Shown here: positions 8,976 through 60,100 of the stretch, piece after piece | Position numbering within the stretch: the first letter of the stretch is position 1 | Layout: each line of letters begins with the position of its first letter | Assembly: GCA_977020255.1 (NCBI GenBank) | Contig: CDROCS010000787.1 | Location: forward strand, 186,001-250,000 | Source: Obrimoposthia wandeli | Taxonomy: Eukaryota | Reading direction: 5' to 3' | Length of the DNA: 64,000 nt | Translations under genes and position numbers: made by a program | Notes under the pieces: model-generated | What the model was told of the DNA's origin: nothing | Database searches by the model: none | The model's input: the letters and a program-made list of their open reading frames with translations, nothing else

Positions 8976-9175
8976 AATATTAGGCAAAATGCGTATTATA
9001 CCAAAAAATTACAGTGCATTTTATGAAACTTAGCTTGGAAAACTTTAGGAAACTTTATTCATTGAACTTTTGAATGCTATGAATAAAAAATATAAAATAA
9101 TATTTTAGGACCTTTCATCAACTTTTAAATGTTATTTATTTTAAAATATTGTTATAAAGTTTAAATAGTGAAGTG

Positions 9176-9390
9176 GCCTTTTCTATAGGAACAATATAAT
9201 CCAATTCTGAATATCGTTAATAGTAATTTGTGATGTTGCCTTTTAAATAGGAACAATAAAATCCAATTCTGAATATCGTTAATAGTAATTTGTGATGTTG
9301 CCTTTTAAATAGGAACAATAAAATCCAATTCTGAATATCGTTAATAGTAATTTGTGATGTTGCTTTTTAAATAGGAATAATAAAATCCAA
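9176..9390. repeat. Tandem repeat, 62-bp unit, about 3.4 copies
   Basis: TAGGAACAAT recurs at 9186, 9248 and 9310, and as TAGGAATAAT at 9372. The units are nearly identical and have no unique spacers. Confidence 0.95.
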
Positions 9391-10382
9391 GTCTTTTTAT
9401 TCAAATATTTTTAAGTAAATGTTATTTGTGAGATGTCAATATTGCATTTTGCTATTTAAAGCAATAACACATGCAAACACATACAGAGACAGTACTGTAG
9501 TTAAGTGTGTGTGGCAGGATCAGTAACAACGAATGCGCTGCCTCAGTCCATCACAGCACACACATGCACGCAGAAATCAAGTCCGGAAACTCCCTTCCCC
9601 AAAAGTACACTTAATTTGCCAAAAGTAGAATGAAGAGTGCACATCTATCGATTGGCTTTGTAGGGCACACAAATTCCGACGTCACATGTTCTGGTGTGGA
9701 AAAATTGTGTGTATGTCTTTAACTGCAGACAGTCTTTAATCAGTCTTCTGATGATTGTGTCAGCCTCAGAGTTACAGACACTGTTGCCATCGATGTCAAA
9801 CATTGAGTGTTAGCAGATAAAGAGAGAGAGGGAAGACCAGGATGAAGACAGCCGATGTGATAGAGTGGGTAGCCGGGATCAGCAGCGCTGGGAGAGTCGC
9901 CGTTGTTGTTGCCACCGCTCCCATATTGTTTGTTGTCAGCCAGAGAGAAAATTGCATCAAACCGCAATTACATCCGCTGTCTTTTCAGGTAGAGCGTGAT
10001 TGACTGGGGAACGCAACTGGTCCCGCATACACACAACATAAAGAGGGATGTATAGGTGAATTGAGGATGATGTTGATGATGATTCTGGCCGATGATGGGG
10101 AAGGAAGGTGGAATAGGACCAAATCTGTTGGGAGGTCCGGAGAGCTGTTTGGGCTGATCTCGGTCTACTGGTTCTGTTTGTGTGTTCGAGGACTGGTGCA
10201 GTGTGGAGGGTGAATTAGAGGCAGTATGGTGTGGGGCCCACGAAAAGTTGGTACACAGTAGAGAGAGAGGGAGATTGCGCTGTTGGTCAGGTTGCGGTGC
10301 TGTCATCAAAGTCTGCGGTATCCGCCGCTAGAGAGGAACTGGGCGGAAAATTCTGCCATAAATCTATTTTTATCTATATGCC

Positions 10383-15029: not shown

Positions 15030-17914
15030 ATTGCTGAATCACGTGTTCTGAGGGATTTGACCAATTAGAGACCAACGATAATTTTTGATCATAAAAGTTC
15101 TCGTCTGACTATATATAGACATCGTGTTTTAGTTAGATGTTGCAAATTATTTATGTGGTAAAGAAGTCGACTTGATTAGTAGTGATTTGATAAGAAAAAT
15201 AAAGAGTCGAGTTTGGTAAAGGTGTGCTTTTGGTGTGGGTAATCCTTTGTTGAATCTAACAGATAAGGATAAGAAAAGCAAGACAAGTTGATATGCTTCT
15301 TTGTGCTGACCAAATTGAATTACAATGGTCAATTATAGAAATCGTAGGAAATCGAGGTGACCCTATAGCTAGGTTAACTCCACTAGGATGGACATGCGTA
15401 GGGAAAGTGAACGTGAATATAGCTGTACAAAACAAACAAATTTCATTCGTGTGTTCTCAACAAATGCTGAGCTCGACGTTTAATTAAAAAGATTTTGAGA
15501 AATTAATTATATTGAAAATAAAGAATATGATATGTTTAAGCCTGATTGAAAAATATATCAATCAATGGTTAAGTCAATTACCAGAGTGGGTGGTCAGTAC
15601 TCAATAAAAATGGCATGGAGACAAAATAAAAATCAATTACTCCCAAATATAAATGTTGTATTAAATAGATTGGAAGGTTTGTATACACGACTTAATAATG
15701 ATGCCTTTTTGAAAAGGGAATATGCAAAAATGAGCAATAACCAAATAGTGAAAGGATATTTAAAGGTGATAGATGAATTAAGGGATGGAAATATAAAATT
15801 GTATTAACATCACTTTTCCGTTATCGGAATGTATAAAGAAACTATAAAGATTCATATTGTATTTGATGTTGTAGCAAAAGTAAATGGAATGTATCCAAAT
15901 AATATCATTGAATGTGAACCTAAGCTACAAAGTAATTTGAAATATATAATTTTGTGGTCTGAAAGAAAAATAGCTTTGGTGTGCAATGTTTCAGAAATGT
16001 ATTTGCAAATAGTTGTTTATTAAGAGGATCAAAGTTAGATGCGATTTCTGTGGAAGAATAACGAAGGGAAACAGGAGAATTATGAATATGAATGAGTTGT
16101 TTTTTGAATTTATTACATCACCAGTTTTCGCAAGTTAATAATAAGAGGAAATGTTTAAAAGATCCGCTGAATCAGTGCTCGAATCTATATATATGTACAA
16201 CAAATTAGATTCGATTGAAGAAGCAATAAGTTTGAATTAAATATTTGCCTGCAGTTTGGAAAGAAGCTATGATGGTAGTGAATATGTGGATTAGCTATAA
16301 TGGAGACGTAAATCATACTATTGAAGTAAAGAAAAGAGCAAGTGGATTTCAAAGAGAATATGAAAGCTCAATAATAATAATAAGCTTTATGAATTAGCTG
16401 GCAAGCAACACAGGATGTTTTAACATTTACAGTAAATTTTAATGATGACTATGTAGTAACCAAGACAAAGGGTTTAGGATATTTGTCCAGAATATTTGAT
16501 CCTTTAGGATTATAAGCCCTGTAGTGATAGTTGCTAGAATAATTATGCAGCGAATTTGGTTTACCGGAAGAGGATGGGATGACAATTTAAGTAATGCTTA
16601 GAAAGAAGTAATTTCAAGTTGGATACAATATTATCATGCCTTAGGTTCAAACACCACGTTACTTAACGAAAATAGACAGCAAGGCTACAAAAATACATTT
16701 ATTTGTGGATGCCTCTATTAAAGCTTATAGAGCTTTAGCACATATTCAAAAACCAATTGGGATAAAGTGAAAGTTCGTCCAATTGCATAAAAAGCAAGAG
16801 TGACACATTTAAAACCAGTAAGTATTTCAACAAATAGCTGCATGTGAAAGAGTTCGATTGACAAAGTTAATTAAAGAAAGTTGCGTTTTAGTGTGATTGT
16901 GAGAACGTACTTTGGTGGATAAAATAACCAAACCGGTGCTATCAAAATTTTGTGACTAATTAGGTAGAACGTACTCAAGAAGACACAATTCCTGAACTAT
17001 GGCAATATGTTCCGTCTCAACAAAAGCCATCAGACATTTTATCTCGAATAAAGGACACATTTTACTGTGCTGATAATAAATTATGGTGGCATGGATCAGA
17101 ATTTCTAAGGAAGAGTGAGACAAAATAGCCATCAAGTTCGAGTTTTCAAAACAAGAATGATGAAATAGAAAGAAAGAAGCCTATAATATCATTAATCACT
17201 TCAATTTTAGATGGCTTCCAGGTAGAGATTTATTTCAGTTTTAGTAGATTAGTAATATTACGAGTTTGGATTAGGTGACTTATTAATCATTGTAAAGTTA
17301 GACAGTGAAACGAAAGATTGGACTAATAAGCGTGGAAGAATTAGAGTTTAGTACATTCGAGGTATGTATTCAAAGAACATCAAAATAAATATTTTTACGG
17401 TGAAGTAAAATAATTGCATTTGTCTAAAAAAGTAAAGAGATCAAGCAAACTGTTGAAAATGAACTCAAAATTAAATTATTCTCAAATCATGCAATTAACT
17501 TTCAGACGTTCATACGTAGTTTTAGATTTCAATTCGAGATTTCCTGAACCTTTGTCAGGAAAATGTTGAATAAATTGGCTATTAATCAAAGAGGAACATG
17601 ACAAACATAAGCATTATGTGGGTATTCAACATATGATAGAAAAGGTGAGAAAACTTATCAGCAAAAGTATAGAAGCTATGCGGACCTTGTATCAAATTTA
17701 AAACAAGGCCCATGTCTCAAATAATAACATCATTATCCGGATTGTGTTTCAAATAACAATTAAGAGCAAGAGTTTGGGTAGATTTTACTGGATATTTTTG
17801 ACCAAGTAAGGTAGAAAGAGAACACATGAAAAGATATATGTTTGTTTATTTACTTGTTTACAAACGAGATCCATTCATTTAGAACTCAGTTACGGCCTGG
17901 ACACTGACGCTTCT
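15030..17914 (+). mobile_element. Degenerate BEL/Pao LTR retrotransposon, left part (protease-adjacent region, RT, RNase H, start of integrase)
   Basis: Broken frames encode DMLL.AD...GDPIARLTPLGWTCVG, RIFDPLGLL.PVVIVARIIMQRIW..GRGWDD, LFVDASIKAY and RSIHLELSYGLDTDA. Many stops and frameshifts; no LTRs found. The left boundary is approximate. Confidence 0.85.
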
Positions 17915-18213
17915 TGTTTGAGGGACCATTAAATTGGTAAAACATAGAAATACACAACATAGATTCTTTATTTATCATTACATTAACTTTCAAATTAAAA
18001 ACTTTCCATAACAACTTCTTCAAATGACCAAGGTCACTTTTTAACTTTTTTAAACAATTCCAAACTTTAACATATTAAAAACTTTTATATATACCTTCAT
18101 CGCTACTTTCATTACCCACCCTACCGTCATCCTAATTATTACTATTTAATTTATTTAATTAATAATATTTAGTATTTAATTCTTTTCTATTAATAATAAT
18201 TAATTCTTCAACA
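17915..18213 (-). repeat. 3' LTR of the nested BEL/Pao element
   Basis: TGTTTGAGG...TTCTTCAACA, a direct repeat of 25495-25796 with roughly 20 differences by eye. A polypurine tract (minus strand TGGGGGAAAA, 18214-18223) abuts it. Confidence 0.95.
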
Positions 18214-21200
18214 TTTTCCCCCATTTGATCAGACTAGATCAATCTACGACTTAACTATATTCTATTTAACTTACTATTATTTCTCATACTCTTTACTCAT
18301 CATTATCACCCAGTCACATGCTTACTTTCATTATTCAGCATTGACATAAGGATAACAATGAGCAAATTATAAAACAGCTCAAAGGACCCAATCTAATTTA
18401 CACAAGCTATGCAGCGCTCTAACTATTAACTTATTTTCCACCCTAATCTTAGCTACTCTCACCTTGCCATCCTCTCCGGTCTCTAATTTTTCCATTCTAC
18501 CTAATTTCCATTTACCTCTCTCCTCTTGCTTCTCTATTATTCACAAGATGTCATCGATCAGTAACGGTGTGCCACTTTTGCCACATGGGTACTATCTCCT
18601 CCATCCATCGCTTCTATAGCATACTGGTTAACTTTTGGACAAATTTCTATCTGTGCTTCGACCTTATTTCATCACTCCCAAACTTCTTCTCAGCATACGC
18701 TTGATTTATTAAAAAAATGGTTGGGTGTAAGAGCCTCAATTTCCTTCGCAACCATGCTCTTAACTCCAATGGATCTAGAATTTACAAGGCTTTCAGCTTC
18801 GATGAATACTGATTGTAATTCTTCGTCAGTCACTTCGGCTCCTCTTAGTATCCGGTATATAGCCATTTTGGCACATTTTATCAGGATCTCAAAGATCCCT
18901 CCAAAATGTGGTACATGTGGTTGGTTGAAGACCCAACGTATCTCCTCCTTTACTAACTCCCTTTGAATCCGATAACCGTCCCGTATTAATTCGCTCACTT
19001 CATTAAACGCCCCCACAAAATTTGTGCTATAATCCGATATTATCATCCGTGGTCTCTCTCTTCTTCCTATAAATCTTTTTAATGCCCTAATAAACCCATC
19101 GACATCCAAACCATAAGCCATCTCTAAATGAATGGCCTGCGTTTGCAGGCATGTAAAAAGGTAAGGGTATATCTTAGTCCTCACTCTTCCTCGTCTTTGT
19201 TTTGTGATGAGTGGCCCTGTAAAGTCCACTCCGACGTTTGCAAAGGCCCTTAACGGTTGTTTGAATCTGAATCCCTGCAAGGGGGCCATCTCTTCGACCA
19301 TCACTGCGGCTTTACTTTTAAAGTATTTTTAAATCGTATTATCCAAGCTAAGACTCTCTTCAACCTCGTCAAGTCGGAATAAGTCTCTATCTTGAAACAG
19401 TTTACTTCCTGTATGAACATTGTTACCTCCTTGTACCGTCTCTTTTTCTCTTTATCTGACTGTATTTCTTCTAAGTCTAAATTTACTAGCCAATTTTATT
19501 TCTGTTTCTTTAGGTACTCCGGTCCTTCCCACAAAATTGTCTCATCAATCAATAGCTGTACATCGACTCCCCGCGATAGTATATCTGCTGGATTTAGCTA
19601 AGTGAACACATACCTTTAGAGCTTTATATCTGTATCCTCTTGGATCATTCCCACTCGGTTGGCTACAAAGGGGTTGTAGTCTCTTTCGGCTGGCGTATCC
19701 ACCATAATACGTTCTAACTGTCCCACCAAAATGTTGTTTTTACCTCCATTAAATTTAAGCCTCCCATATCGTTTGTGCTAACTTCACTCCAATCACTGCA
19801 GCCATCAGCTCTAATCTGGGTACACTTTTTATCCTCACTGGGGCAACTCTACTCTTAGCTGCCATCAATCGCATCGTCACTCTGCCTGCGTCTTCATTAC
19901 GCATGTATGCTACTGCGCCATACGCGGTAGTCGAGACATCCATGAATACGTGCATTTCTTGCTTTTTCTCATTCGTTATCACCCACCTCGGAATCTTTCT
20001 CTGTCAATCGCTTACAATCCGCTATCCATTGTACTATTCTCCTAGTTAATTCTTGACTTACTTTGTGATCCCAATCCGACCCTGTAAGCCAGACTTCCTG
20101 CATAATAATTTTGGCTCTTATGACTATCGGGCTAACAAAACCTAATGGATCAAACACTTTTGATAAAAGCTTAAGAAAGATCGTTTGGTTATGTCGTCGA
20201 CTTCGTAAAATTTTGTTAATATGAAAATATTGTTAAATTTAACATCCCAGTGTACGCCTAATGTTTTTACTGTTAAGTTACCCTCTTTGTCATGTAATTG
20301 TAATGCATTTGCTCTTTCTGAAAGTTGTATTTTTTCATTAACCTCCGGGCTATTGCTAATCCACTTCCTTGCAATCATCCCTGCATTCCCCCATATTTTC
20401 ACCATCTGATCTTTTAGCTTATCTGCTTCGGTTACTGAAGACACTGAATCTAGACTATCGTTCTTGTAGGTTGATTGCAAAATTGTCTCACTGGCTCTTG
20501 GGCTCTTCACTTTAAATGTTCAGCCTCTACTCTGGTTACCAGTTGAGCCAAGAACGGTGAAGCATTTATTCCAAAGACTACTCTCTGAAATTTATACATT
20601 TCCCTCTGGTTCTTTCTATTTTTCCTTAAGAACATTAGCCATGGCCGGTCTTCCTAACATACCTTGATCTGTAAGTACATCTCTGAAATATCACACACTA
20701 ACGCTATTACATTCCTCGGAATCGCAGAAGAATTGCTATAAGATCTCCTTGCAGCTTGAGACCACAATTGATTGCCTCATTTAGACTCATATTATTACTT
20801 TTCCCGCTGCGCCAAAGACTAATCTTACTTGTGTTGTACTTTTTTTCCTTTTTATCACTGGGAAATAAGGTAGTAACCAATTTGTTTCTTTCTCTTCATC
20901 TAGCGTTAACTTTTTTATGTATCCGTTAGTCATATAATTTTTTATTACTGTTGAATAGTCGTCTTTTAATAATCGATCCTTATCCAACTTTCTGATGAGA
21001 CTATTTAACCTTTTTTCGATCATGGAGCTATTCATTCTCAATTCGGCTTTTTTCTCATTCCATAGCAACTTAACTTCATAGCGGTTGTTCTCATGTACCA
21101 CTTCTGCTCTTGATAAGTGTAGCAATTGAGACTCCTCGTAATTTATCTTCCTTTTTCCATCAGGAACAGATTCAACTTCCCAGAATCTTCTTAAATCAAT

Positions 21201-24200
21201 ACCCACTTCTTCCTTACTGAATAGTGTATAGCATATATTGGTCGATTGATTGACCGCGTTTGTCTTGACACATATCCACCCTAGTGTTGTTAATCTCGCA
21301 ATAGGTGCATCACGTGGACCTACTACTTCTTTGATACATCGGTGTAAATCCAGGTGGTCAGCTTCAATTAGTATATCAACCTTCTTTTGGGACTCTTAAT
21401 TCGTAAATTCAATGCCTGCTAAATCTAGCCAGTAAAATGATTCTTCAGACCAGTTTATCACCTCTAAGCTGTCAGCAATTTCCTCCAGCGTCAACATCTT
21501 TACTACTTGTTTAGTTTTCCCATATCCTCTGCTAATTTCGGCTTCTATCTCTTTGCAGTCTAACTTACGCACCTCACCACCAATAACTCCCATTGGCAGT
21601 TCTATTTTTGTATCTCGTGCTCCCAAAATGTAAGCTAGATCCTTACTTATATATGATAGGGTACCAGCGTCATCTAATAGTGCGTTCGCGCATGTTTCAA
21701 TTCATTTTCTCCTTATTATCACTGGCACTGTCCTTAACGCTACGAATGCGCGTGCTTTCTGTTGTTTATCCTTTATTACCATTGTTTTACCTACTACCCT
21801 TTCCCCACTTTATCGTGCAGAAGCCAATGATGCTTTTCGTGACATTCATATGTCCGACATAACTTGTTAAATCTCCACTTCTCCACCGTGTGATTACTGC
21901 GTAAGCAATTCTTGCATACTTTCTCTCTCTCGACCCACTTCTGCCTCGCTGCCACTGTCAACTGTCTAACTTGCTCACATTGATCAGTATATTGGTTGGC
22001 TTTACATTTTGCACATTTGACCTTTCTTTCGAATTTGTGGATTGGTTATTCGTAAGTAATGTGTGAGTGTAATGATGTGTGTCATTGTTTTATCTCCCGT
22101 GTTTTTCAACGTCGCTGGTTCGTCTTCTTTGATTCTCACGACTTCCATTAACCTTGTTGGCTCTCCTTAGATTCTCACTTTCTTGCTGGGTCCATATCTT
22201 TAACATACATACATTTTATTTCTCTCCGTTTTGTTGGAACCACTTAGTCCAATCCATCACTCCTAACATTGGCAACTTTCTCAAAAGCTTGTTGAACAGA
22301 AACCCATTTCCAAGATCACCTTTGTTGTTTTCTTCTCTTGCTCTGATTACTATCTTGTTTATTAATTGTACAAATGCATCCAGATCCTTGGTTTTCTCTC
22401 CATCTTATCACTCTAAACTTTTCAACTTCGTCCATTAAACCTCTATAATTTCTTTCCCTTCCTCCGTATCTTTATTCTAGCAATCTTAAAGCTTCGTCGT
22501 AACTTGTATCTGTGAACCCAAGGTTTTGAATTAATCTGTAGGGTTCACACCTCACATATTCCATCAGCTGTAGCACTTTTTCTTGCTTTGGCGCATTGGT
22601 CAGATCAACGACAGTACCAAATATTACCCTACAACTTTCATAATCTTTATAATCCCCAAAGAAATATGGAATACTAATCTTTTTTAGCCCCTTCCACACA
22701 TTTTGGCCAGACTTATTTTCTCTGGGTTCGTCTCTCATATTCCTTGGTTCTTTTGTGGTCTTACTTTCAAATTCCTTTTCTGCTTTTGCAATATCACTCT
22801 TTATTTCCTTTATCTTGAGTTCGTATTTGTTTTCCACCGTCTGCTCCAACTCTTTGTTATTCTGGTAACTGAATATTCGTATACCTCTTTCTCTTGTCTG
22901 AATCCTCTTTTGTATTCCGTGCTTCCGTCTATTTATCCCCAGCCAATATTATATACAAACTTGTAACCCTCTCCGCGCTCTCATTGTTTACCTCCCACAT
23001 TCTCCCTTTCAACATCATCATCACGACAATATTGCTTTCTTCGCCAATGCTCTCCCCCATCTCAACTTTCCTTCCCTGGCGTTGTAACCAGCAATTCTCC
23101 TCCTCCAACCCATATCGCTTCTGATTCTCCTCCATTGCATCCTTTCCTGTGCCATTTCGTTTCAAGGCACTACCTTTATATGTGCCCCTATGCATAAAAG
23201 GTATTGACCCACATCACTACTTCCTCTAGCAGGCCCATTATCTCCGATAATGTAACCACCACTGAATGCGCACTTCTTCTCTTGGACTTCACCGCTTGAC
23301 CTCCATGTTAATTCTTCCACTCTTTCATCTTCATAAACGCATCTGACTTCTATTGGTTTCTCCTCTGCATCCGAACATTGACATCACTGGCTATCGTATC
23401 TGTCATTCTTTCAACAGTTATCTCTTCTTGACATTGCCACTCTTCTTGAAAGGTTCTAGCCACCTTTTCCTGAGGCCATGGCCACGATCCTTGCGTTTGG
23501 ATGCACGCTGACACCGTCCTCAACCGACATTGCGAAGCATCCCTCCATCAGACTTCGTCTATAGACCTCCGCCAATGCCGGCTGAGGTAATTTCTCGGAT
23601 CGTGCCTGAAATCCTTTGAAATTCTCCACATATGATTCGTCAAAGAATGAGTCAAACGTCTCCTTGAATCGTTTATAATCGCTTATCGAATTAAAACTTT
23701 CCCTGCGATTTAACTTTACTTTTACTATGTATTTCATCATTTTGGTATTTGTTATTTGGTAGTCGTATAATATGACTATTAAAAAATTAACTACTACCAA
23801 CAAAACAAAACTAAATACTATATTTCTATACATGAAATGTCGAAAAATTGAACCTTTTACATTGAACCCTTTTACTTTTAATTTAGAAAATAACGGTGTG
23901 AGTCCCGGTAAAAAAATTGTAAAAAGGTCCAACCTTCAGCAGCGACTTGTCCACTCATAATATTTGGCGCATGATAAAGGGCTCCAGCTGTGGCACCTTC
24001 TCCGATTGTCCGATCGCCCGTCGTATCCATCTTGAAATCTTCAGGTCCTTGTCCATTTTGTCCTGACCATTTTCAAGTGACGCTCCCTGCTCCACGAGTT
24101 TGGTGAGATTCTCTATCTCCAACTTGATCTTTTCCCGAGCCAACTTCTATGCTTTCTCGGTTTTCTTCTTCATTGACGCTATTGTCTTCTGATCCTCTTG

Positions 24201-24204
24201 TGAC

Positions 24205-25400
24205 AAACAAAATCCAAATTCCCGTCTTCCAGCAATAATAACCGCATCGTGTTCACATCGCACGACTAATTTGATATCGTTACCGAGGTTAAACTTTCGG
24301 TATCGATAACCCACTGAACCCAGGTTTAATTTGTCCTTGTCTTCATCCAAGAATGGATTCGGATTATCGAAGGCAAATATTTTATGTTGAAGAACCTGTT
24401 GGGTGAAGGTATGGTTTATAAATGTAGCTTCCAGTGACAAACTGCAGGAAGAATTAATATTATTCGAATCTTCAGCTGGAAATTGTTATTGCCCGGTCTT
24501 TTGTCTAAAATAAGATTATATCCTACTTTCTTGACGAAAATATCCCAAGAATAAACAGAACGTGTACAACACATAAGGGCCGATATGAAAGCATCGGTGG
24601 CAAAAACATTTCCAGCCTTTTCATTAGCCAATTTATGAATTATAGGATCATCTCCAGTGGCAACATTATGAATTATGTGATTCATAAGTTTCAATTTCTG
24701 TATATTATGGGTAATAATTATGTTGTGATTTTTATCATAATATCTTAACTCACCACAAGTATAAAGATCTTCTGGTTCTTCTGAGAGGATCATTGATAGC
24801 TTGTTGAATCAACTAAATGCAATCTCCTCAACTACTTTCCATGTAAATTTACCTTGAACCGAAGCCTCCATATGAATTCGAGCTTGTCTACGATAATAAT
24901 TACCCCATCCTGTAGCATTATTTAAGCAACCGTGTTGCTTATTAATCCTTCTCATGCCTTGTTGCCTTTATCTATTTATGAACTTATATTTCTTAGTCAA
25001 TCCTAAGCGATATTGTTGCTCGAGTTGTTGCTGTTTTTTCTGAGCGACCTTTTCTCTGCGGGTTCTAGTGGCAGCAAATTTGTTCTTCTTTAAAAAGCTT
25101 TATTTTTGATATTTAACAGTATTGACCATATTGAAAGTACTTTCATCATATTCATGTACATATGCATATTGATTTCCTTGAAAATTCATATTATTAATTC
25201 TATCCATCCTCTTCCGTAAGTCAGGACTATAATTCCTTGTCCAATCTGCAAATTTACCTACTTTTATATCTTTATTAAATGGCTGATAAGGAAGATCCGC
25301 AAACCTCTCTGGGACTGTATAAGGATCCCATCCATCAGGGCCATCATCAAATGTTAATAACAAAAATCCAGTTGAGAATTTAGTGTCTGCCCTGGCAACA
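24205..25400 (-). pseudogene. EIF3D: Intronless, 3'-truncated eIF3 subunit D copy inside the LTR element
   Basis: Translates to DGWDPYTVPERFADLPYQPFNKDIKVGKFADWT, NQYAYVHEYDESTF, GNVFATDAFISALMCCTRSVYSWDI, SLEATFINH.F.QQ, NPNPF, SVGYRYRKFNLGNDIKLVVRCEHD, all hallmark eIF3d motifs. There are four in-frame stops between 24800 and 25100 and a ~30-nt frameshifting deletion near 24470. Confidence 0.93.
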
Positions 25401-25480
25401 TCTGACTGAGCTTCATTATCCAGACGAAATATATAGAACTGATTGGTGTTTCCTTATGCCTTCCGTTCTTCTTTCTTCTT

Positions 25481-25494
25481 ACGCTCTGCTACAA
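25481..25494 (-). promoter_or_regulatory. Primer-binding site, initiator tRNA-Met type
   Basis: The minus strand reads TTGTAGCAGAGCGT directly after the 5' LTR, one mismatch from TGGTAGCAGAG, the complement of the animal tRNAi-Met 3' end. Confidence 0.8.
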
Positions 25495-25796
25495 TGTTTG
25501 AGGAACCATTAAATGGGTAAAACATAGAAATACATAACATAGATTCTTTTATAATCATTACATTAATTTTCAAATTCAAAACTTTCCATAACAACTTCTT
25601 CAAATGACCAAGGTCACTTTTTAACTCTTTTAAACAATTCCAAACTTTAACATATTTAAAACATTTATATAAACCTTTATCGCTACTTTCATTACCCACC
25701 CCTCACCGTCATCCTAATTATTACTATTTAATTTATTTTATTAATAATATAGTAGTATTTAATTCTATTCTATTAATAATAATTAATTCTTCAACA
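25495..25796 (-). repeat. 5' LTR of the nested BEL/Pao element
   Basis: TGTTTGAGG...TTCTTCAACA, matching 17915-18213. It is followed on the minus strand by the PBS. Confidence 0.95.
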
Positions 25797-26420
25797 CTTA
25801 TCTTAGAACTTTGACCGATTCATATGTAAATGTGGTTTATCAGACACATTTATATCAGATGATAAGAATAATTTTGAGGGGGTTGTGAAATTAAAAGAGC
25901 TAAAGAGTGAAGGACTCAAGGTACATAAGGAAATGGCAGTCAACAGTATTAAATGGATATTTAATCCACCCAGAGCACCACATTTTGGTGGAAGTTTTGA
26001 AGCTATGGTAAAGTTGGTGCTGTGAGCCATGTATAACATTAACAATGCCGAGTTGACCGATGACGAATTAATCACAGTTTTGACAGAAAGAGAACAGCTG
26101 GTAAATTCAAGATCAATTAGCTATAAAGGAACCCGTGAAGGTGATCCCGAGGTGTTAACTCCCAACCATTTCCTTACATGTGAAGGTTTCACAAATAGCT
26201 CATTTGAAGGTAAAAGAGGACTGAAATGCCGTTGGAGGTTAATTCAAGAGCTAAACAAACATTTATTGAGTCGATGGATGGAAGATGAATTTTTACAATT
26301 TTGTGTGCAACAAAATTGGTGTGAAGAGAATCCACTGAAAATAAATTATGTTGTTTAATTTTAGACAATAAAAATAAAAGATGAACTTAGCCGTTAGGAA
26401 GGATAATTGAATTGATAGTT
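25797..26420 (+). mobile_element. Degenerate BEL/Pao element, right part (integrase core and C-terminus)
   Basis: Resumes the integrase interrupted at 17914: ...FISDDKNNFEG...IKWIFNPPRAPHFGGSFEAMVK...ELTDDELITVL...PEVLTPNHFL...PLGRIIEL. Confidence 0.9.
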
Positions 26421-41758: not shown

Positions 41759-42085
41759 CTATTTTAAGACGGCAGCTGCAGATTGTGATAGTAGTGGCTG
41801 TTTGGGTGACGAGGTCAGGGTTGGTAACGGCGACATCGCTACAGACAGCTTCTTCGACATTGTGTTGTTGCCGTTTACACTGCCTGATAGAGATTGCTGC
41901 TGGTGTTGGTGATTACTGCTGCTGTTACCACCACCATTGTTGCTGTGACCAGTCGACGACATTGCTTGCTGCTTTGTACAACCATTCTTTACAAGAAATT
42001 CAGCAGCGAAATCCTTGCCATACATACGGGCGTAAAAGTACGCATTTCGACCATTTACGTCCTTTAAGTCAATCTGGGCTTTGTA
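41759..42085 (-). CDS. AGAP1: Centaurin-gamma/AGAP ArfGAP, last exon (ankyrin end and low-complexity tail)
   Basis: ttcttgcAG acceptor: YKAQIDLKDVNGRNAYFYARMYGKDFAAEFLVKNGC...SAAAVLK then TAG. Confidence 0.9.
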   Translation of the reverse strand, partial: YKAQIDLKDVNGRNAYFYARMYGKDFAAEFLVKNGCTKQQAMSSTGHSNNGGGNSSSNHQHQQQSLSGSVNGNNTMSKKLSVAMSPLPTLTSSPKQPLLSQSAAAVLK

Positions 42086-43929
42086 CTGCAAGAATAAAAA
42101 TAAATGAATATACGAAAAGTAGGAACCAGACCGGTGAACCTTTTTAAGTGCGCGTGTAAAAAGTGTACTAACAATTTTGATCATGTTGACGATAGGGCAG
42201 TTTTATAGATGAAAAATTAATAAAGAATATATTATTTAGTTTTTTTAAAATAATCCATCATAATATTTCATAAAAGATAAACAGATAAATAAATACCAAT
42301 ATCAAATATTTATTAATGAGATTGTTGATGTTGTACCTTAGATGATAAATGCTTTACATTAGGTTTATATTTCGTAAATTTTAGTAAAACACACGTCGAA
42401 TCATCAGTCGTTCTATTTCTGAAACGGTATTTTATGAAATTCCTTTCTAAAAATAATGACTCAAGCATATGTAGAAGATAATACTGTTTCTTTTAAACAA
42501 CTAAAAGTTCCAGGAATGGAATTTTAAGTTCTCATTGTTGCATTTTTTCAATTATACCTATTAAGCGATTATATAGAACTGAATTGAAAATCAATTTCAG
42601 TATCTTCCAAACTATGTCACTCAAAAATCTTAAAATTGAAATTTTGATGTTTCTGTAAATTGTCCGAACTGTGTAAATCTCGAGAAAATAAACTTGTTGT
42701 CTATCGAATTAGTCACTGTAGCAAACACTTGTGTATACTTGATCTGTTTTTTTCATGAGATTCTAGATCCACAGAGAATTTTTTGTGTTTGGAAAATATT
42801 TATGGGTACTGGAAATAAGGTTATGATTGAAAATTTGTAATTTAGCTTCACATACTTTGATCAAATTATGCATCATTGTATTTTTTTGATACGTGCTAAC
42901 TCCAACACACGTGTCATAGGTTCGCCAAGCAAAAATTAGAAAAACCACTTCATATATACAAAATACTTTCTAAAGTAATTGTCAGGATCAATTATAAAAT
43001 ATTAGCTCTCTAAAATCATTATTAAAGATTTTTACATTATTAAAGTGTAAATATTACATTTCTTAAGGTCTGATAAATTAATTTATTTAAAATTATTATA
43101 TTTAATATTTTTTGAATTTTAAAATGAAAATAAACAATCTTAATGTAGTCAATTTGATATAAAGTTGAGAAGATGTCTAAATCCACAAAATAGTACTGAG
43201 GATGAAATGATTGTCAAGAAATAGTTATTGCGTAATTAATATAAATGAATAATTTCAATTTTAAAGATAGGATTAGATTCGTAATTTTAACAATTTTAAC
43301 TAAGACACAAGAATAAAATAAAGAATATGGGAAGGAAGAATATTGTTGTTTTAGGATAGAAATGTAAAAATTGAAAATATTTTTTAATTTCCCTTGTAAG
43401 TCGATTTTTGAAAATGTGTAAATGCATAAAAATTTTGAAATAACAAAGAATAATAAAGTTATAAATTATACTTGAATAATGAATCATTAAAAAAATCAAA
43501 ACTATAGTAATAAATACATTGTCAGAAAAAAACCCAATATAAATTAAGAGCCAGAGTAATCTAATAAATATATTAATAATTACTCTATTTGGTATATAAA
43601 TACAACCTTTAATGAAGTTATATTAAAAAAATATTATAATTGATGTTTAATAAATACATAAGAAAAACGATGCTGCTAAGTAGAATTACTTGTTTGTTTT
43701 ATTTTGTATTTTAAGTATACACTGAAATGAATATTTTTAGAAAATAAAATATTTTAACATGATTAACATAAATATTCATGTTTCTAAAACAAGAACGTAG
43801 CAAAATAACTCACAAGCGTTTATAAATCAAATAATTATGATAGGTCAAAACTGAACACATTTCTACAAAATATAATACTTGATATATTTATTTGATTTAT
43901 TGTAAGTATATATAATTGTTACAGTCAAA

Positions 43930-49983: not shown

Positions 49984-52115
49984 CAGTAATGCGCCAAACA
50001 GTGCAAGTTTTACTATAGTGCAGATTTCGTAAAATATTAGTAAATAAATAAAATATAGAATTAAACTATATTTAATACTTTAAAAATATCAATATTGATT
50101 TCAAGATCTATATATAATATTCTTAAAACTCACATTTAAAAAATTATTCTTTCATCTGATATTTTTCCGAGTCAATGTTGCAGAATGCTATTATTAAAAC
50201 AGATTTTATTGAAATGTTAAGTCAAACAAAAGGAAGCACAGACATTGTTGGTTCAAACAAACGACTGTGGTGGAACATTAGAAAATAAACTAGATATTAT
50301 AAAGTGTCATGAAGATGGTGCATCATTGGCTAAAATTTCACGCGATTATAAAATAAATGAGTCATCTGTGTGTGCCATTGTAAAGAAGAAACAACAATAT
50401 AAAGATCATGGAATTGCTACTGCATCGTACATGATAGAAAGAATTGCTAAAAATAAATACAAAAACATGTTGAATATGGAGCGACTTTTATTAATGTGGA
50501 TTGAAGATAGTAATGCAAAAAGAATTCCACTCAGTCAACTTATTATTCAAGAAAAAGCACGAAGTCTTTTTAGCGCAGTTACCACTCAAAATGAAAGGGA
50601 TACCTTTATGACTACAAATGAAGAAATCTTTTTTAATGCGAGGCGCTTTAAAGAACGTAAAAAATTCATAATGTTAGAATTGTTAGTGAAAGTACTAGTG
50701 CTGATGTAGAAGCAGCCGCAAAATATCCTGATGAATTAAAAAAATGTATTGAATATGGTAATTACAGTGATAATCAAATATTTAATGTGGAATAAATAGG
50801 ATAGTATTGGAAGAAAATGTATACTTGAACATATTTAGCTGAAAAAGAAGAATCACAACCAGGGTATAAAATTAAAAAAGATCGTCTAACTCTTTTGTTA
50901 GGTGGCAATGCGTCTGATGAATTTAAATGGAAGCATATGCTTGTTTACCGGACAAACAATCCAATAGCTTTAAAATAAAAACTCTCCCAGTATTGTGGCT
51001 ATCGAATCGAAAGGCATGGGTTACGAGAGATTTATTTGAAGACTGGTTCACAAATTATTTTTGTCCCGCAACTGAACGATATTGCAAAGAAAATGACATT
51101 GAATTTAAAATTATTTTGTTAATTGATAACGCACCAGGAAATTCACCTGCACTTGGGAATTTAAATAACAATGTTAAAATTATATTTTTACCACCGAACA
51201 CAATTTCGTTATTACAGCCGATGGACTAAGGAGAGATCGCAACATTCCAGGCTTATTATATGAGACAAGCTTTTTCTCAAGCAATTAAAGTTACGACAGG
51301 AGAAAATGCCATTTCATTAACTGATTTTTGGAAAAAACTATAATATCAGAATTTCAATTAAAAATATTGATTCAGCATGGTGTGAAGTTACTGTTAGCAA
51401 CATGAGAGCTGTATAGGAAAAGCTTTTGCCTCAATACGCAAATTATTTTGGTGGTTTTGAACCTCAAGTTCAAACAGTTGTAGAAAATATTGTTCAGATC
51501 GGGAAAGAGCTTGGATTTAATAATGTAGACTATGCTAATGGGCGTGAATGCATCGACTCTCATTCTGGTGAGCTCGATATCAAAACTCTCGTAGAAATTG
51601 ATCAGCAACGAGCATATGAAGAAGAGGAATAAAAGAATCAAATTATGATCCAGTTGAAATTAAAGAATTTAGCATTGCAGACACGGACAAATTATTTTAA
51701 CTCTATGATGAAGTTTCCAAAATTATTATGAATAGAGACCCAAATGTCGAACGCATCATCCAAGTGCGAACCACTGTTAAAAAAGTATTCGATGCTACAG
51801 AGAACTTAATGCCACTAAAACGAAGACGAAATCAGTGCAAACTTCTTTGTTCAAATATTTTTCTAAACAATAAAATCCTTTCACTATTCTTTTTGTTTCA
51901 ATAAAGATTTAATTATAAATTTGTTTCATTATCTGTCAATGCTCTTTTTTGATGCATTTAATAAATTTTAATTATTTTATTGTATGTACGTATCGATATT
52001 TATTCAGTCGTTACTATTACTATTAAACCCATTATATAATGCATCAAACAGTGCAGTTCCGAACAGTGCGGGACAATTCTGGCACGAATAACCCGCACTG
52101 TTCGGGGTATTACTG
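49984..52115 (+). mobile_element. Tigger/pogo DNA transposon with TIRs and TA target duplication; transposase inactivated
   Basis: TIRs CAGTAATGCGCCAAACAGTGC / GCACTGTTCGGGGTATTACTG are each flanked by TA. ORF pieces give an HTH (KLDIIKCHEDG.SLAKISRDY.INESSV..I.K), a CENP-B-like HTH (MERLLLMWIED...LIIQEKARSLF) and DDE_1 (SNRKAWVT..LFEDWF...LLIDNAPG...FLPPNT.SLLQPMD). Multiple stops and frameshifts. Confidence 0.93.
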
Positions 52116-52486
52116 TACTTAAATATTAAAAAAACTTCAAAAGCATATTGATTTATAATTACCTTTAAGTTGTTTGTATTCTTTCTGAATAAAGAGAATA
52201 AGCAAAGAGAAAAGCTTCAGTTTTTTCTTCAATGACATTAACGTTGTTTAAAATACATTCAAGTTTATTCAAATGATTAAAATAATCACAAATACATACT
52301 AGAGTATTATCAGCGCACAAATAGTAGTTAATATTAGGATTTGAAATTACATCTTCTAATTTTATCATATAGGTTTAATTAAAACTTTGTAAATTGGTCC
52401 AAGAATTGAATCTTGCGATAAACGTTTTTCAAAATATGTAGAAATATGAAAAAGTTGCCTGAAAGTAAAATTACTAAAATTCCTAC

Positions 52487-52858
52487 TTGGCTGTCCACAA
52501 TCTGCACAAAAGTCATTTCCGCTGACACCGGTGATTTCCTGGATCATCTTGCGCCTGGCCTCGGCATCAGAGAGGTGTGCGGAAGCTCCTACAGCTTCTC
52601 CATCTACACTTGACTGGTGAGAACCTGCTGACGCTGCATGCTGTGAGCGATTGGCTGATTCGCGCTCCCCAGTTCCGGTCTCCTGAGAAGAGTCTCCACC
52701 ATCCAACACCGGCGACCGACGAATGTCCATATTTTGCAGACACTCTAAGATAGCTTGCTCGATGTACCCCACCCACTCGTCACGGTCCTCTTCACTGCTC
52801 GTTTCAAAACACCATTGCTTTCCATCCAGCGACACGATTTGGAATTCAAATGTTTCAT
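52487..52858 (-). CDS. AGAP1: AGAP exon (C-terminal half of the split PH domain and start of ArfGAP)
   Basis: DETFEFQIVSLDGKQWCFETSSEEDRDEWVGYIEQAILECLQ...GNDFCADCGQP; 372 nt, phase 1-1. Confidence 0.93.
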
Positions 52859-57719: not shown

Positions 57720-60100
57720 GTAGCATAGTTTTTTGGTGATGAAGCCGGAACTTTCAAGTTAGAAAACGTTCATCTCTATGATTTATGCAGTTCAAGAAAT
57801 GTTATGATTAAAGATGATATCTTGATTATGAAAGGGATAGAAGATGAGATTCAATGGATAATTGACAAAAGAAAGATTGAGAAGGTGCTGTGAGCTGCCA
57901 AGGTCCTACAAAGCTCTGAATGGATTCTGGTTTGCAGCTGCTCAAAAGGTGGACCGACAATGGCGAAACACGGACTCCAGATGAGGAACCCCACGGAAAC
58001 CTCCAGACATCCCCAGTTCTAGCGTGGTCGACTGCTACGGAGCTATGACAAACTGAAATACTGACACTGGTGATCTTTCCTGTGTCCTTTCTGATCTCGA
58101 CTATTTGTCTCCTGAGTGTGTACATGTGTCTGGGATGGCATGAGTCTGGAGTACAAGACCGATCGACAGAGACTAACATCTACATTATTGTTGATTGTGC
58201 ACAGTTAAATCATGCGAGTTGTTTGGGAAATTTTGATGAAATTATGATTGTTTGAAGAGTAATCATGAATGTTCGAGGAGCTCAGAAACGACTGTTGGAT
58301 TCGTGGACTGGACTGGAGATAAAAATTAGTGACAATAACAGAGTGATAAAAAGCAATGACAATAATACGTAACAAATTGAAGAGACGGAGAGTGAATATA
58401 TTAATCGGAAGGAAATTAAATGAACAAAATAGAGATGGGTATAATTGAAAGAGTAAAGCGGATAAAAATAGAAGTAACATGAGAATACCAAATAATGAAT
58501 AAAATGAAATAGTAGCAGAAACAATTAAATACAGAGCCTCGGGCTTTGGTTATTTAGTAAAGAGAGTGAAGAAACGAGAAATAATCATATATATTTGAAA
58601 CCGTATCTATCTTTTTATAATGTTTAATTTAGAAACCCACATATATTGTGAAAGCGATTGCCGAAAGACAATCACATCAGAGGTTAAGTCAAATGAGTAT
58701 GTTGAAAGCATCCAAACAAGAATTAATGACAATAAAGGCATGCCATCAGATAGACTTAGTTTCGAAGGTATGAAATCACAAAATAATCACATGTAGACCG
58801 AGTACAGAATCAAGAGAGGGAGCACTATTTATTTGGGGTTACAATTGAAAGAGGAAGAGTTAAGTAAAGGAATGATGAAAAAGCGTTTATTAAAAACAAA
58901 ATTCACAAGGTGTAATTTAGCGATGCAAAAATGAAAATGAGATAAAGGTAAGACAGTATCAAAATGTGATGGAGGATGTTACTATGAAGAAAGCAGACTT
59001 AGAGAGGTCTACTGAGTTAGCAAAAAGGATCGTAATAATATTAACACGGCTTAGAAAAAGAAAGCAGTTATTCATACCATACATTGCTAAAAACGTTTTT
59101 ACTAATTAATTCTACAGTTTATGGAGTGGAAACAAAGAAAAAGTCAAAGAGTTTCTATTAAAATATTTCTGAAATATACCCAGCAAAGACGCAGATGAAA
59201 TAGTATGACGGACATATATGAGGTTGAATAAATCACTAGGTCCACATGAACATAACCCAAGCCAATGTGGTGGTCAAAAAATAACTTGATATACCTGAAA
59301 ATAAACAGCACATTCAGGAGAACATTACACCAATCATTGCAATGAGTTTAGGAAATTGTGCCAGGAAGAACGATGGAAAAAGGTAAAAGACAAAAAATTG
59401 TTTAAAAATTATTTAAAGGCCATTGACAAAAGATTTGTAAATGCGGACAATGATGTCATATAGATGGATGTAGTCAAAGGCATTTTATACATTAAAATAC
59501 AAACGAAAGACAGAATAATCTGATGAACCAGGTGCATTTGTAGGTTTAACAGCAAATTATGGTGACTTTCGAACAATTCCGATGATAATTAAAAATGAAG
59601 GGAAGGAAATAAAAATGATTGCTTTTATTGGATAATGCCAGTACCACCAATTACATTAGTCAGGAGATTAGACAGAATTAAAAGTAACATTCCAATCGAA
59701 TTAATTAGAGGAATAGTAAAATAAATGAAATAAAATTGAAAATCTGGAAAGATTTTTGAAAGAAAAGTTAGTGCATTATTTATTAAAGAATTGAACGGAA
59801 ATCTAAGACTCATAGATTGGTTGAAGTTAAAAAGAGTTGACCACATTTGAAGAATATGAATTTCCTGTCAGAAAATAGCAGATAGCTGGCGTAGATACAC
59901 TCAGATGCAGATATGCTGGAAATGTACACTTGTATAGAGGAAAGGATATGTAAATGCGACTAACATATGACAAGGAAGACGATACTAGGATGAACATGTA
60001 TTGGGAAAACCTATGTAATTCAAACAAGTTGTATCCAAACATATTTAACAAATACTGAATTAAGTCAACAGCTCAGACAGTTTTGAGAAATCGAACAAAT
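57720..60100 (+). mobile_element. Degenerate Ty3/gypsy-like retroelement carrying an unknown ORF and a ubiquitin-like domain
   Basis: A purine-rich decayed coding strand. It shows a ubiquitin-like segment (58640-58855), protease-like AF.LDNASTTNYISQEI (~59620-59670) and RT-like NGNLRLID..KL.ELTTFEEYEFP (~59790-59870). No LTRs identified. Confidence 0.55.

What the first reader, a model, noticed from the sequence alone, without database searches (positions are those of the whole stretch)
24205..25494. LTR retrotransposon carrying a captured host eIF3d (cap-binding translation factor) sequence
Within about 100 bp of the PBS, and in the element's sense orientation, lies about 1.2 kb of intronless eIF3d sequence. 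It covers the N-terminus through RCEHD, roughly the first two-thirds of the protein. It retains the 5' end, is cut at the 3' end, and shows no poly(A) or TSD. That is the opposite of a typical LINE-made processed pseudogene and fits capture by template switching during reverse transcription, as in retroviral transduction. eIF3d is established as the eIF4E-independent cap-binding subunit of eIF3. If the family propagated with this cargo, it may have used it to bias or interfere with translation, which is speculative. The copy is now disabled, like the rest of the element.
Basis: partly seen in the sequence, partly recalled or inferred. Interest (0 to 1): 0.85.

Follow-up and report, generated by a model that had tools for sequence, protein, structure and literature searches.

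The report
Retrotransposon copy carrying an eIF3d fragment
A dead BEL/Pao-type LTR retrotransposon carries, between its 5' LTR and its gag region, an intron-free copy of the first ~70% of translation factor eIF3d, a clear but ordinary case of a retroelement picking up a host mRNA, with no sign that the cargo ever did anything.

Summary
On the minus strand, 24210-25390 is colinear with eIF3d residues ~1-390 of 548 (Pfam PF05091; PDB eIF3d E ~1e-20 to 1e-28). It starts ~105 nt after the 5' LTR, in the element's sense orientation, and ends sharply at 24210. It has no poly(A), no TSD of its own and no terminal repeats.

The carrier is a 7.9-kb BEL/Pao-like element (17915-25796; LTRs 299/302 bp, TG..CA, 94.3% identical). 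It sits as one unit, with a 5-bp TSD (4/5 match), inside the integrase of an older BEL/Pao-like element. So the cargo lies within a single integration unit.

The cargo and the element's own genes are decayed to a similar degree (minimum 3.4 versus 4.4-5.3 breaks per kb). The cargo's third-codon-position composition is not element-like.

The best explanation is LTR-mediated retroposition, meaning template switching onto an eIF3d mRNA during reverse transcription. This is already described in animals, including BEL/Pao elements (Tan et al. 2016, PMC5131818).

Not testable here: whether other copies share the junctions, and what the host EIF3D gene looks like. No relative of the element or close relative of the cargo was found in any collection. 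The translation-interference idea has no support, because only 63% of the cap-binding domain is present.

The parts
17910..17914 (.). Target-site duplication, left copy (CTTCT)
   Evidence: It directly abuts the 3' LTR. The right copy at 25797-25801 is CTTAT, a 4/5 match.
17915..18213 (-). 3' LTR (299 bp, TG...CA)
   Evidence: Direct repeat with 25495-25796, 94.3% identity, K2P 0.059. A purine-rich tract (PPT-like) lies immediately upstream in sense orientation, at 18214-18223.
18391..21386 (-). pol region of the BEL/Pao-like element (RT, RNase H, integrase, DUF5641-like tail); broken
   Evidence: Pfam PF05380 'Pao retrotransposon peptidase' hits at E 8.5e-20 and 2.6e-12, with a weaker RT_RNaseH_2 hit. 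The integrase is 52-54% identical to P0194/P0211, which carry PF00665 and PF18701. tblastx matches the outer element's pol. Minimum of 16 breaks in 18400-21399; the longest open stretch is 204 codons.
21387..24209 (-). gag-side region of the element (element-like purine-rich composition); broken
   Evidence: No Pfam hit. A DUF1759-like gag motif was seen by eye only. The break density of 4.4-4.8 per kb is far below shuffles at about 13 per kb, so this region was coding. Third-position purine is 0.63, like pol at 0.62. Minimum of 13 breaks. It contains an AT-rich outlier block at about 23740-23930.
24210..25390 (-). eIF3d-derived cargo: colinear with eIF3d residues ~1-390 of 548 (N-terminal tail, basic RNA-binding region, first 63% of the cap-binding domain); broken
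   Evidence: Supported. It is 40-46% identical to about 170 eIF3d proteins, and 43 of 52 bilaterian-invariant columns are kept. Minimum of 4 breaks (3 stops and 1 frameshift against the best homologues), and no in-frame ATG at the expected start. GC3 is 0.28 and third-position purine 0.43, unlike the element.
25391..25494 (-). Leader between the 5' LTR and the cargo (putative PBS plus element leader and/or eIF3d 5' UTR)
   Evidence: Read directly from the sequence. The first ~55 nt are purine-rich like the element and the rest is not. The PBS could not be verified: there are no tRNA genes in the window and no host tRNA set.
25495..25796 (-). 5' LTR (302 bp, TG...CA)
25797..25801 (.). Target-site duplication, right copy (CTTAT)
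15281..17914 (+). Older BEL/Pao-like element, pol up to mid-integrase (the insertion target, left part); broken
   Evidence: tblastx to the inner element's pol. P0211 residues 2-186 end at 17911. Minimum of 23 breaks, 8.7 per kb.
25797..26358 (+). The same older element, integrase continuing (the insertion target, right part)
   Evidence: P0211 residues 191-379 align at 25810-26355. There is a weak DUF5641 hit.

Best explanation
This is a chimeric copy of a BEL/Pao-type LTR retrotransposon made by LTR-mediated retroposition.

Inferred mechanism. During minus-strand DNA synthesis in the particle, the reverse transcriptase was copying the element's RNA towards its 5' end. At a point near the start of the gag region it switched onto a co-packaged eIF3d mRNA, landing at about codon 390. 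It copied that mRNA to or near its 5' end, then switched back to the element's leader just downstream of the primer-binding site.

Shown structure. The resulting cDNA has the order LTR, leader, eIF3d(1-390), gag-pol, LTR. It integrated as one unit, with a 5-bp target duplication, into the integrase gene of an older BEL/Pao-like element.

Since then the cargo and the element's genes have decayed together. The cargo is a passenger: it lacks the last third of the cap-binding domain, and nothing indicates that it served the element or the host.

Shown here: the anatomy, the nesting, the sharp junction, the absence of LINE hallmarks, the comparable decay and the foreign codon composition. Inferred: the template-switch steps, their order, and that the source was the host's own eIF3d mRNA.
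For: (1) The cargo lies between the two LTRs of a single element. That element interrupts the outer integrase between reference residues 186 and 191 and has a 4/5 TSD.

(2) The cargo is in sense orientation, 5'-complete and 3'-truncated inside a domain. It has no poly(A), no TSD of its own and no TIRs.

(3) It is colinear with the protein over about 390 codons. For comparison, the Mytilus EIF3D gene spreads the same part over at least 8 exon matches in 12 kb.

(4) Minimum break density is 3.4 per kb in the cargo. It is 4.4-5.3 per kb in the element's coding regions, 8.7 in the older element and about 13 in shuffles. The cargo frame was therefore open at about the time the element's frames were.

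(5) There is a sharp compositional boundary at about 24200. The cargo's third-position composition (GC3 0.28, purine 0.43) differs from the element's (0.39-0.51, 0.62-0.63). The cargo has not been resident long enough to drift to the element's composition.

(6) 83% of bilaterian-invariant columns are kept, against 44% overall identity. This is inside the range of functional non-bilaterian eIF3d controls, so the source was a functional gene.

(7) There is direct precedent. [quoted passage not shown]
Against: - No parental sequences are available, neither the host EIF3D gene nor an 'empty' family member. Microsimilarity at the two junctions, the hallmark of template switching, could not be tested.
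- In the published cases part of the element's ORFs is usually replaced. Here gag-pol seems largely kept, and what was lost, if anything, is unknown.
- The TSD has one mismatch.
- The cargo is only 40-46% identical to every eIF3d retrieved. Its origin from this host's own gene is therefore assumed, not shown.
- Equal decay cannot separate 'carried in at integration' from 'inserted soon afterwards'.
Confidence: 0.72

Rival explanations
1. Post-integration insertion. An eIF3d cDNA or DNA fragment was pasted into an already integrated element, for example as filler captured during double-strand-break repair. It landed by chance between leader and gag in sense orientation.
For: Only one copy is known. 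Junction microsimilarity is untested. Break-repair filler also lacks poly(A) and TSD. The cargo's break density is slightly lower than the element's, 3.4 against 5.0 per kb pooled.
Against: The difference in break density is not significant: about 5.9 breaks expected, 4 seen. The position just after the leader, the sense orientation, the 5'-complete and 3'-truncated shape, and continuation in the same reading phase into the downstream element sequence are each what template switching predicts. Under this rival each would be a coincidence. The published filters for LTR-mediated retrocopies are largely met.
Confidence: 0.13
2. Propagated, functional cargo. A sub-lineage of the family carried an eIF3d(1-390)-gag fusion through several rounds of transposition. 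It benefited from this, for example by binding the eIF3 core or the 40S subunit through the N-terminal tail, or by acting as a dominant negative.
For: The eIF3d reading phase continues into the first ~80 codons of element sequence after the junction, interrupted once. The cargo frame was open at about the time of integration. Conserved eIF3d positions are preferentially kept. Secondary retroposition of such chimeras is documented.
Against: All of these points are equally expected for a fresh one-off capture of a functional mRNA, and phase agreement has a 1 in 3 chance. The cap-binding domain is cut at 231 of 368 residues. The cargo's codon composition has not drifted towards the element's. No second copy or eIF3d-gag-pol fusion protein appeared among 819 representative hits or 3143 profile hits.
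Confidence: 0.08
3. An ordinary LINE-made processed pseudogene of eIF3d that landed in the element.
For: The cargo is intron-free and colinear with the protein.
Against: The cargo is 5'-complete but 3'-truncated. It has no poly(A) (longest A-run 4) and no TSD. This is the reverse of the LINE signature.
Confidence: 0.03
4. A resident, naturally intron-poor host eIF3d gene or pseudogene that was flanked or disrupted by transposable elements.
For: Some animals have nearly intron-free EIF3D genes. The Tribolium gene is 2.0 kb for a 1.7-kb CDS.
Against: The piece lies inside the LTR pair. The LTR pair in turn lies inside another element's integrase, whose reading resumes exactly on the far side. 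No eIF3d C-terminal third is present anywhere in the window.
Confidence: 0.02

Closest known systems
LTR-mediated retroposition chimeras in animals (Tan et al. 2016, Genome Res, PMC5131818), e.g. Pao/BATUMI-borne retrocopies in Drosophila and the BEL18_AG-flanked retrocopy in Anopheles
   Same: An internal, partial, intron-free copy of a host mRNA flanked by both LTRs of one element. It is 3'-truncated, has no poly(A) and no TSD of its own, and the carrier belongs to the same superfamily (BEL/Pao).
   Different: In this window the element's gag-pol seems largely retained rather than replaced. Junction microsimilarity could not be examined. The copy is old and decayed (LTR K2P 0.059), not young or polymorphic. 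The cargo gene, eIF3d, was not found linked to retrotransposon capture in the one literature search made.
Bs1 of maize and rice LTR-element-borne retrocopies (as cited in PMC5131818)
   Same: An LTR retrotransposon carrying fragments of cellular genes between its LTRs.
   Different: Bs1 carries pieces of three genes, is non-autonomous, and is present in one to five copies with shared structure. In this window one gene piece is carried and only one copy is known.
Retroviral transduction of cellular genes (acutely transforming retroviruses; established knowledge)
   Same: Host mRNA sequence is recombined into a reverse-transcribing element by copy-choice. A fusion with gag in the same reading phase is possible.
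   Different: Transducing retroviruses normally lose essential viral genes and are selected for the cargo's activity. In this window there is no evidence of selection, and the cargo is a truncated housekeeping factor.
LINE-mediated processed pseudogenes
   Same: An RNA-derived, intron-free gene copy.
   Different: Those are 5'-truncated, 3'-complete, carry poly(A) and are flanked by TSDs. All of these features are absent here.

Membership tests
LTR-mediated retrocopy (template-switch chimera) | Retrocopy lies inside one LTR element, with both LTRs of the same element flanking it | tested here: met
   LTR pair at 17915-18213 and 25495-25796, 94.3% identical. The cargo at 24210-25390 lies between them.
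LTR-mediated retrocopy (template-switch chimera) | No L1/LINE hallmarks: no poly(A) and no TSD around the retrocopy | tested here: met
   Longest A-run is 4. The only flanking repeat is a low-complexity 9-mer. No TIRs.
LTR-mediated retrocopy (template-switch chimera) | Processed (intron-free) relative to the parental gene | tested here: inconclusive
   The cargo is colinear with the protein over ~390 codons. The Mytilus orthologue is multi-exon but the Tribolium orthologue is nearly intron-free. The host gene was not found.
LTR-mediated retrocopy (template-switch chimera) | Microsimilarity between mRNA and element at both fusion points | not testable with these tools
   This needs the host EIF3D mRNA and an 'empty' family member, and neither was retrievable. 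A shared AAGAAGAAA / AGCGT motif near both borders is noted but is low-complexity.
LTR-mediated retrocopy (template-switch chimera) | Element discontinuous: part of its internal sequence replaced by the retrocopy | tested here: inconclusive
   gag-side and pol regions are present. Whether leader or gag N-terminal sequence is missing cannot be judged without a relative.
BEL/Pao LTR retrotransposon | LTRs ending TG...CA, short TSD, PPT before the 3' LTR | tested here: met
   The TSD is 5 bp with a 4/5 match.
BEL/Pao LTR retrotransposon | pol with Pao-type domains (PF05380, integrase plus DUF5641 tail) in the order RT, RH, IN | tested here: met
   PF05380 at E 8.5e-20 and 2.6e-12. Integrase and DUF5641 by homology to P0194/P0211.
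BEL/Pao LTR retrotransposon | gag with DUF1759 domain | tested here: not met
   No Pfam hit at E<=1 on any gag-side piece. Only a motif resemblance by eye, and the region is decayed.
BEL/Pao LTR retrotransposon | PBS complementary to a host tRNA | not testable with these tools
   No tRNA genes in the window and the host is unknown.
eIF3d (PF05091) | Significant match to the family profile | tested here: met
   Three pieces hit at E 1e-15 to 7e-35, all above the gathering score. PDB eIF3d chains are also hit.
eIF3d (PF05091) | Complete cap-binding domain (human residues 161-527) and an intact reading frame | tested here: not met
   The match ends at human residue 390, which is residue 231 of the 368-residue chain 5k4b. 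Domain limits are taken from PMC10165153. There are at least 4 breaks.
LINE-made processed pseudogene | 3' poly(A), flanking TSD, 5' truncation bias | tested here: not met

The most novel reading that the evidence does not exclude
The eIF3d(1-390) frame was translationally fused to gag, and this chimera multiplied as a sub-family. That would be an animal LTR retrotransposon lineage carrying the eIF3-core/40S-binding tail and RNA-binding region of a translation initiation factor. Such a lineage could have tethered its Gag or its RNA to initiating ribosomes, or interfered with host eIF3. Alternatively, sitting in a nest of transposons, the locus could feed small RNAs against the host eIF3d transcript.
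Probability: 0.07. Interest if true: 0.7.

Novelty: new member of a known kind. Interest (0 to 1): 0.3.

Why it matters
This is a clean, well-bounded fossil of host-mRNA capture by a BEL/Pao element. The nesting inside an older element shows that LTRs, cargo and gag-pol form one integration unit.

It adds one more example, and a new cargo gene, to LTR-mediated retroposition. That mechanism creates partial gene duplicates and gene fusions in animals. As a single decayed copy with a truncated domain it has no evident biological consequence.

It would become interesting only if the source genome holds several insertions with the same junctions, or intact eIF3d-gag fusions.

Tried and rejected
Other copies or relatives:
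- blastn of the element against the rest of the window found nothing. tblastx found only the older, different element.
- Protein-collection searches with the 125-aa cargo piece and the 204-aa integrase piece gave no near-identical hit. The best were 44-70% over parts, and 54%.
- A metagenome scan with a 24-mer shared by both LTRs gave 0 matches. A scan with the cargo protein gave 0 confirmed loci.

Host EIF3D:
- The representative search (819 hits) and a profile search (3143 hits, 120 listed) gave no protein more than 46% identical over the whole cargo, or 57% over the best piece.
- The closest proteins are slow-evolving marine invertebrates (Lingula, Mytilus, a crinoid). This places the source only as 'metazoan-like, long branch'.
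- The host species was not identified. Rfam gave 0 matches and the tRNA scan 0 genes.

eIF3d-retroelement fusion proteins among the hits:
- Long hits turned out to be fusions with unrelated neighbours (Fcf2 and others) or insert-bearing eIF3d.

Nature of 22850-24209:
- No Pfam hit and no eIF3d similarity. It is treated as native element sequence on composition and break density.

Other checks:
- Helitron- or MULE-style DNA-level capture: no TIRs or terminal repeats.
- Two encoding-contig look-ups (Lingula, Nymphon) were not on record.
- Converting LTR divergence to an age was rejected, because no rate is known for an unidentified host.

Full report
**What is there**

The window is AT-rich (about 25-30% GC) with islands of higher GC. 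Two direct repeats mark an LTR pair:
- The repeats are 299 and 302 bp, at 17915-18213 and 25495-25796.
- They are 94.3% identical (K2P 0.059), and both run TG...CA in minus-strand sense.
- A purine-rich tract precedes the 3' LTR.

Between the LTRs, the minus strand carries a decayed BEL/Pao-type pol:
- Pfam PF05380 'Pao retrotransposon peptidase' hits at E 8.5e-20 and 2.6e-12.
- The integrase is 52-54% identical to P0194/P0211, which carry rve and DUF5641 domains.

**Nesting proves one integration unit**

tblastx of the element against the rest of the window shows a second, different BEL/Pao-like pol on the plus strand. It runs 15281 to 17908 and resumes at 25888.

Alignment with the reference integrase P0211 confirms this. 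Residues 2-186 end at 17911 and residues 191-379 start at 25810. The 7.9-kb element therefore sits exactly inside the older element's integrase. It is flanked by CTTCT on one side and CTTAT on the other.

Everything from 17915 to 25796, the eIF3d piece included, thus lies inside a single insertion into an older transposon. The older element is more decayed, at 8.7 minimum breaks per kb, which fits the nesting order.

**The cargo**

Open pieces of the minus strand between 24210 and 25390 were searched separately.
- Three pieces match Pfam eIF-3_zeta at profile positions 5-90, 190-288 and 317-395 of 532.
- The same three match human eIF3d at residues 9-90, 188-288 and 313-390 of 548.
- About 170 full-length eIF3d proteins align by tblastn to 24207/24237-25345/25390 and nowhere else in the window.
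- The pieces are colinear with the protein, with no intron-sized gap.
- Past 24210 no frame shows eIF3d similarity: 0 hits, against 210 for a control piece.
- GC and sense-strand purine content jump at about 24200.

The cargo therefore equals eIF3d residues ~1-390. This covers the N-terminal tail, the basic RNA-binding region and 231 of the 368 residues of the crystallised cap-binding domain (domain limits from PMC10165153).

It begins 104-116 nt after the 5' LTR. The first ~55 nt of that leader are purine-rich like the element. The remainder may be eIF3d 5' UTR, which is an inference.

**Borders**

- No poly(A): the longest A-run is 4.
- No flanking direct repeat other than a low-complexity 9-mer, AAGAAGAAA, with an adjacent AGCGT.
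- No terminal inverted repeats.
- The eIF3d reading phase continues into the first ~80 codons of element sequence after the junction, interrupted once. This has a 1 in 3 chance of occurring by accident.

**State of decay (counts only)**

The cargo shows 3 in-frame stops and 1 frameshift against its best homologues. It has a minimum of 4 breaks by a parsimony count, no in-frame ATG at the expected start, and one length difference of about a dozen codons relative to bilaterian proteins.

Minimum breaks by region:

| Region | Minimum breaks | Per kb |
|---|---|---|
| eIF3d cargo | 4 | 3.4 |
| Stretch between cargo and the gag-like motif | 6 | 4.4 |
| gag-to-protease stretch | 7 | 4.8 |
| RT-RH-IN | 16 | 5.3 |
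| Older outer element | 23 | 8.7 |
| Shuffled sequence | - | ~13 |

The cargo frame was therefore open at roughly the time the element's frames were. The 1.36 kb between the cargo and the recognisable gag motif behaves as former coding sequence of the element.

**Where the cargo came from**

It is only 40-46% identical to every eIF3d retrieved. The closest are slow-evolving invertebrates (Lingula, Mytilus, a crinoid, a nemertean). Algal proteins are at about 36%.

Even so, it keeps 43 of 52 columns that are invariant in 92 bilaterian proteins. This lies within the range of 24 functional non-bilaterian controls (60-92%, median 77%). The source was therefore a functional eIF3d of a lineage that is divergent or unsampled here, followed by modest neutral decay.

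Third codon positions are compared:

| Sequence | GC3 | Third-position purine |
|---|---|---|
| eIF3d cargo | 0.28 | 0.43 |
| Element gag/pol pieces | 0.39 | 0.62 |
| Pieces at 22929-24143 | 0.51 | 0.63 |
| Host-like ORFs in the window | 0.43 | 0.48 |

The cargo's composition is unlike the element's and closer in purine content to the host-like ORFs. This argues against long residence of the cargo in the element lineage.

**Mechanism**

The anatomy is what Tan et al. (2016, PMC5131818) describe as LTR-mediated retroposition. In their cases, partial, often 3'-truncated retrocopies without poly(A) or TSD sit between the LTRs of one element. They are made by template switches of the reverse transcriptase between the element's RNA and a co-packaged mRNA. 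Their examples include the Pao element BATUMI and mosquito BEL18_AG.

A 5'-complete cargo placed next to the leader fits a specific path. The enzyme switches onto the mRNA while copying the start of the gag region, runs to the mRNA's 5' end, and is then forced back onto the leader. This path is an inference.

Microsimilarity at the junctions, the decisive signature, needs the parental sequences and could not be tested.

**Rivals**

- *Later insertion of a cDNA fragment during break repair.* This cannot be excluded with one copy. It would make the position, orientation, shape and phase agreement all coincidences.
- *LINE-made pseudogene.* This fails on every hallmark.
- *Resident host gene.* This is excluded by the nesting.
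- *Propagation and use of the cargo by the family.* This has no positive evidence. No second copy and no eIF3d-gag-pol fusion appeared in any search, and the cap-binding domain is cut.

**Limits**

- The host species, its EIF3D gene and other members of the element family were not found in the collections reachable here.
- Intron loss is therefore only indirectly supported. The Mytilus orthologue is multi-exon but the Tribolium orthologue is nearly intron-free.
- The PBS is unverified.

Noticed in passing
window 15281-17914 and 25797-26358 (+): An older, different BEL/Pao-like element is the insertion target. Its pol is 35-60% identical at protein level to the inner element's and more decayed (8.7 minimum breaks per kb). 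No LTRs were found for it and its 5' extent is undefined.
   Followed up: partly
window ~23740-23930 (-), inside the element's gag-side region: An AT-rich block (GC ~0.30-0.35 against 0.45-0.50 around it) with local direct and inverted repeats (I1 at 23741-23815, D6 at 23853-23881). It may be a small later insertion or a leader-like spacer.
   Followed up: no
window 25480 and 24170 (-): The 9-mer AAGAAGAAA, with AGCGT just upstream, occurs near both borders of the cargo. This could be the microsimilarity used for template switching or just purine-rich low complexity. It cannot be decided without parental sequences.
   Followed up: partly
window 9162-9394: Tandem repeat with a 62-bp period, about 4 copies, 91-94% identical.
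   Followed up: no
window 50245-50709 (+): ORF with CENP-B_N and HTH_Tnp_Tc5 DNA-binding domains (E 1e-6 and 5e-6). This is a pogo/Tigger-like transposase remnant.
   Followed up: no
window 52365-52835 (-) and 41759-42184 (-): GC-richer open stretches that look like exons of a host gene. There is a weak PH-domain hit at E 0.008, and an ankyrin-like, N/Q/H-rich stretch seen by eye only. If they belong to one gene, its introns exceed 10 kb and hold transposons.
   Followed up: no
window 58001-60000 (+): Strong purine skew on the plus strand (GC skew +0.24, AT skew +0.22, GC 0.33), resembling the composition of the retroelement body. It may be another retroelement fragment.
   Followed up: no
protein P0290 (Lepidogalaxias salamandroides, 997 aa): A fish gene model annotated as eIF3d carries RT_RNaseH domains (PF17919, PF17917) in front of PF05091. 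It is either an annotation merger with a nearby retroelement or another eIF3d/retroelement juxtaposition.
   Followed up: no
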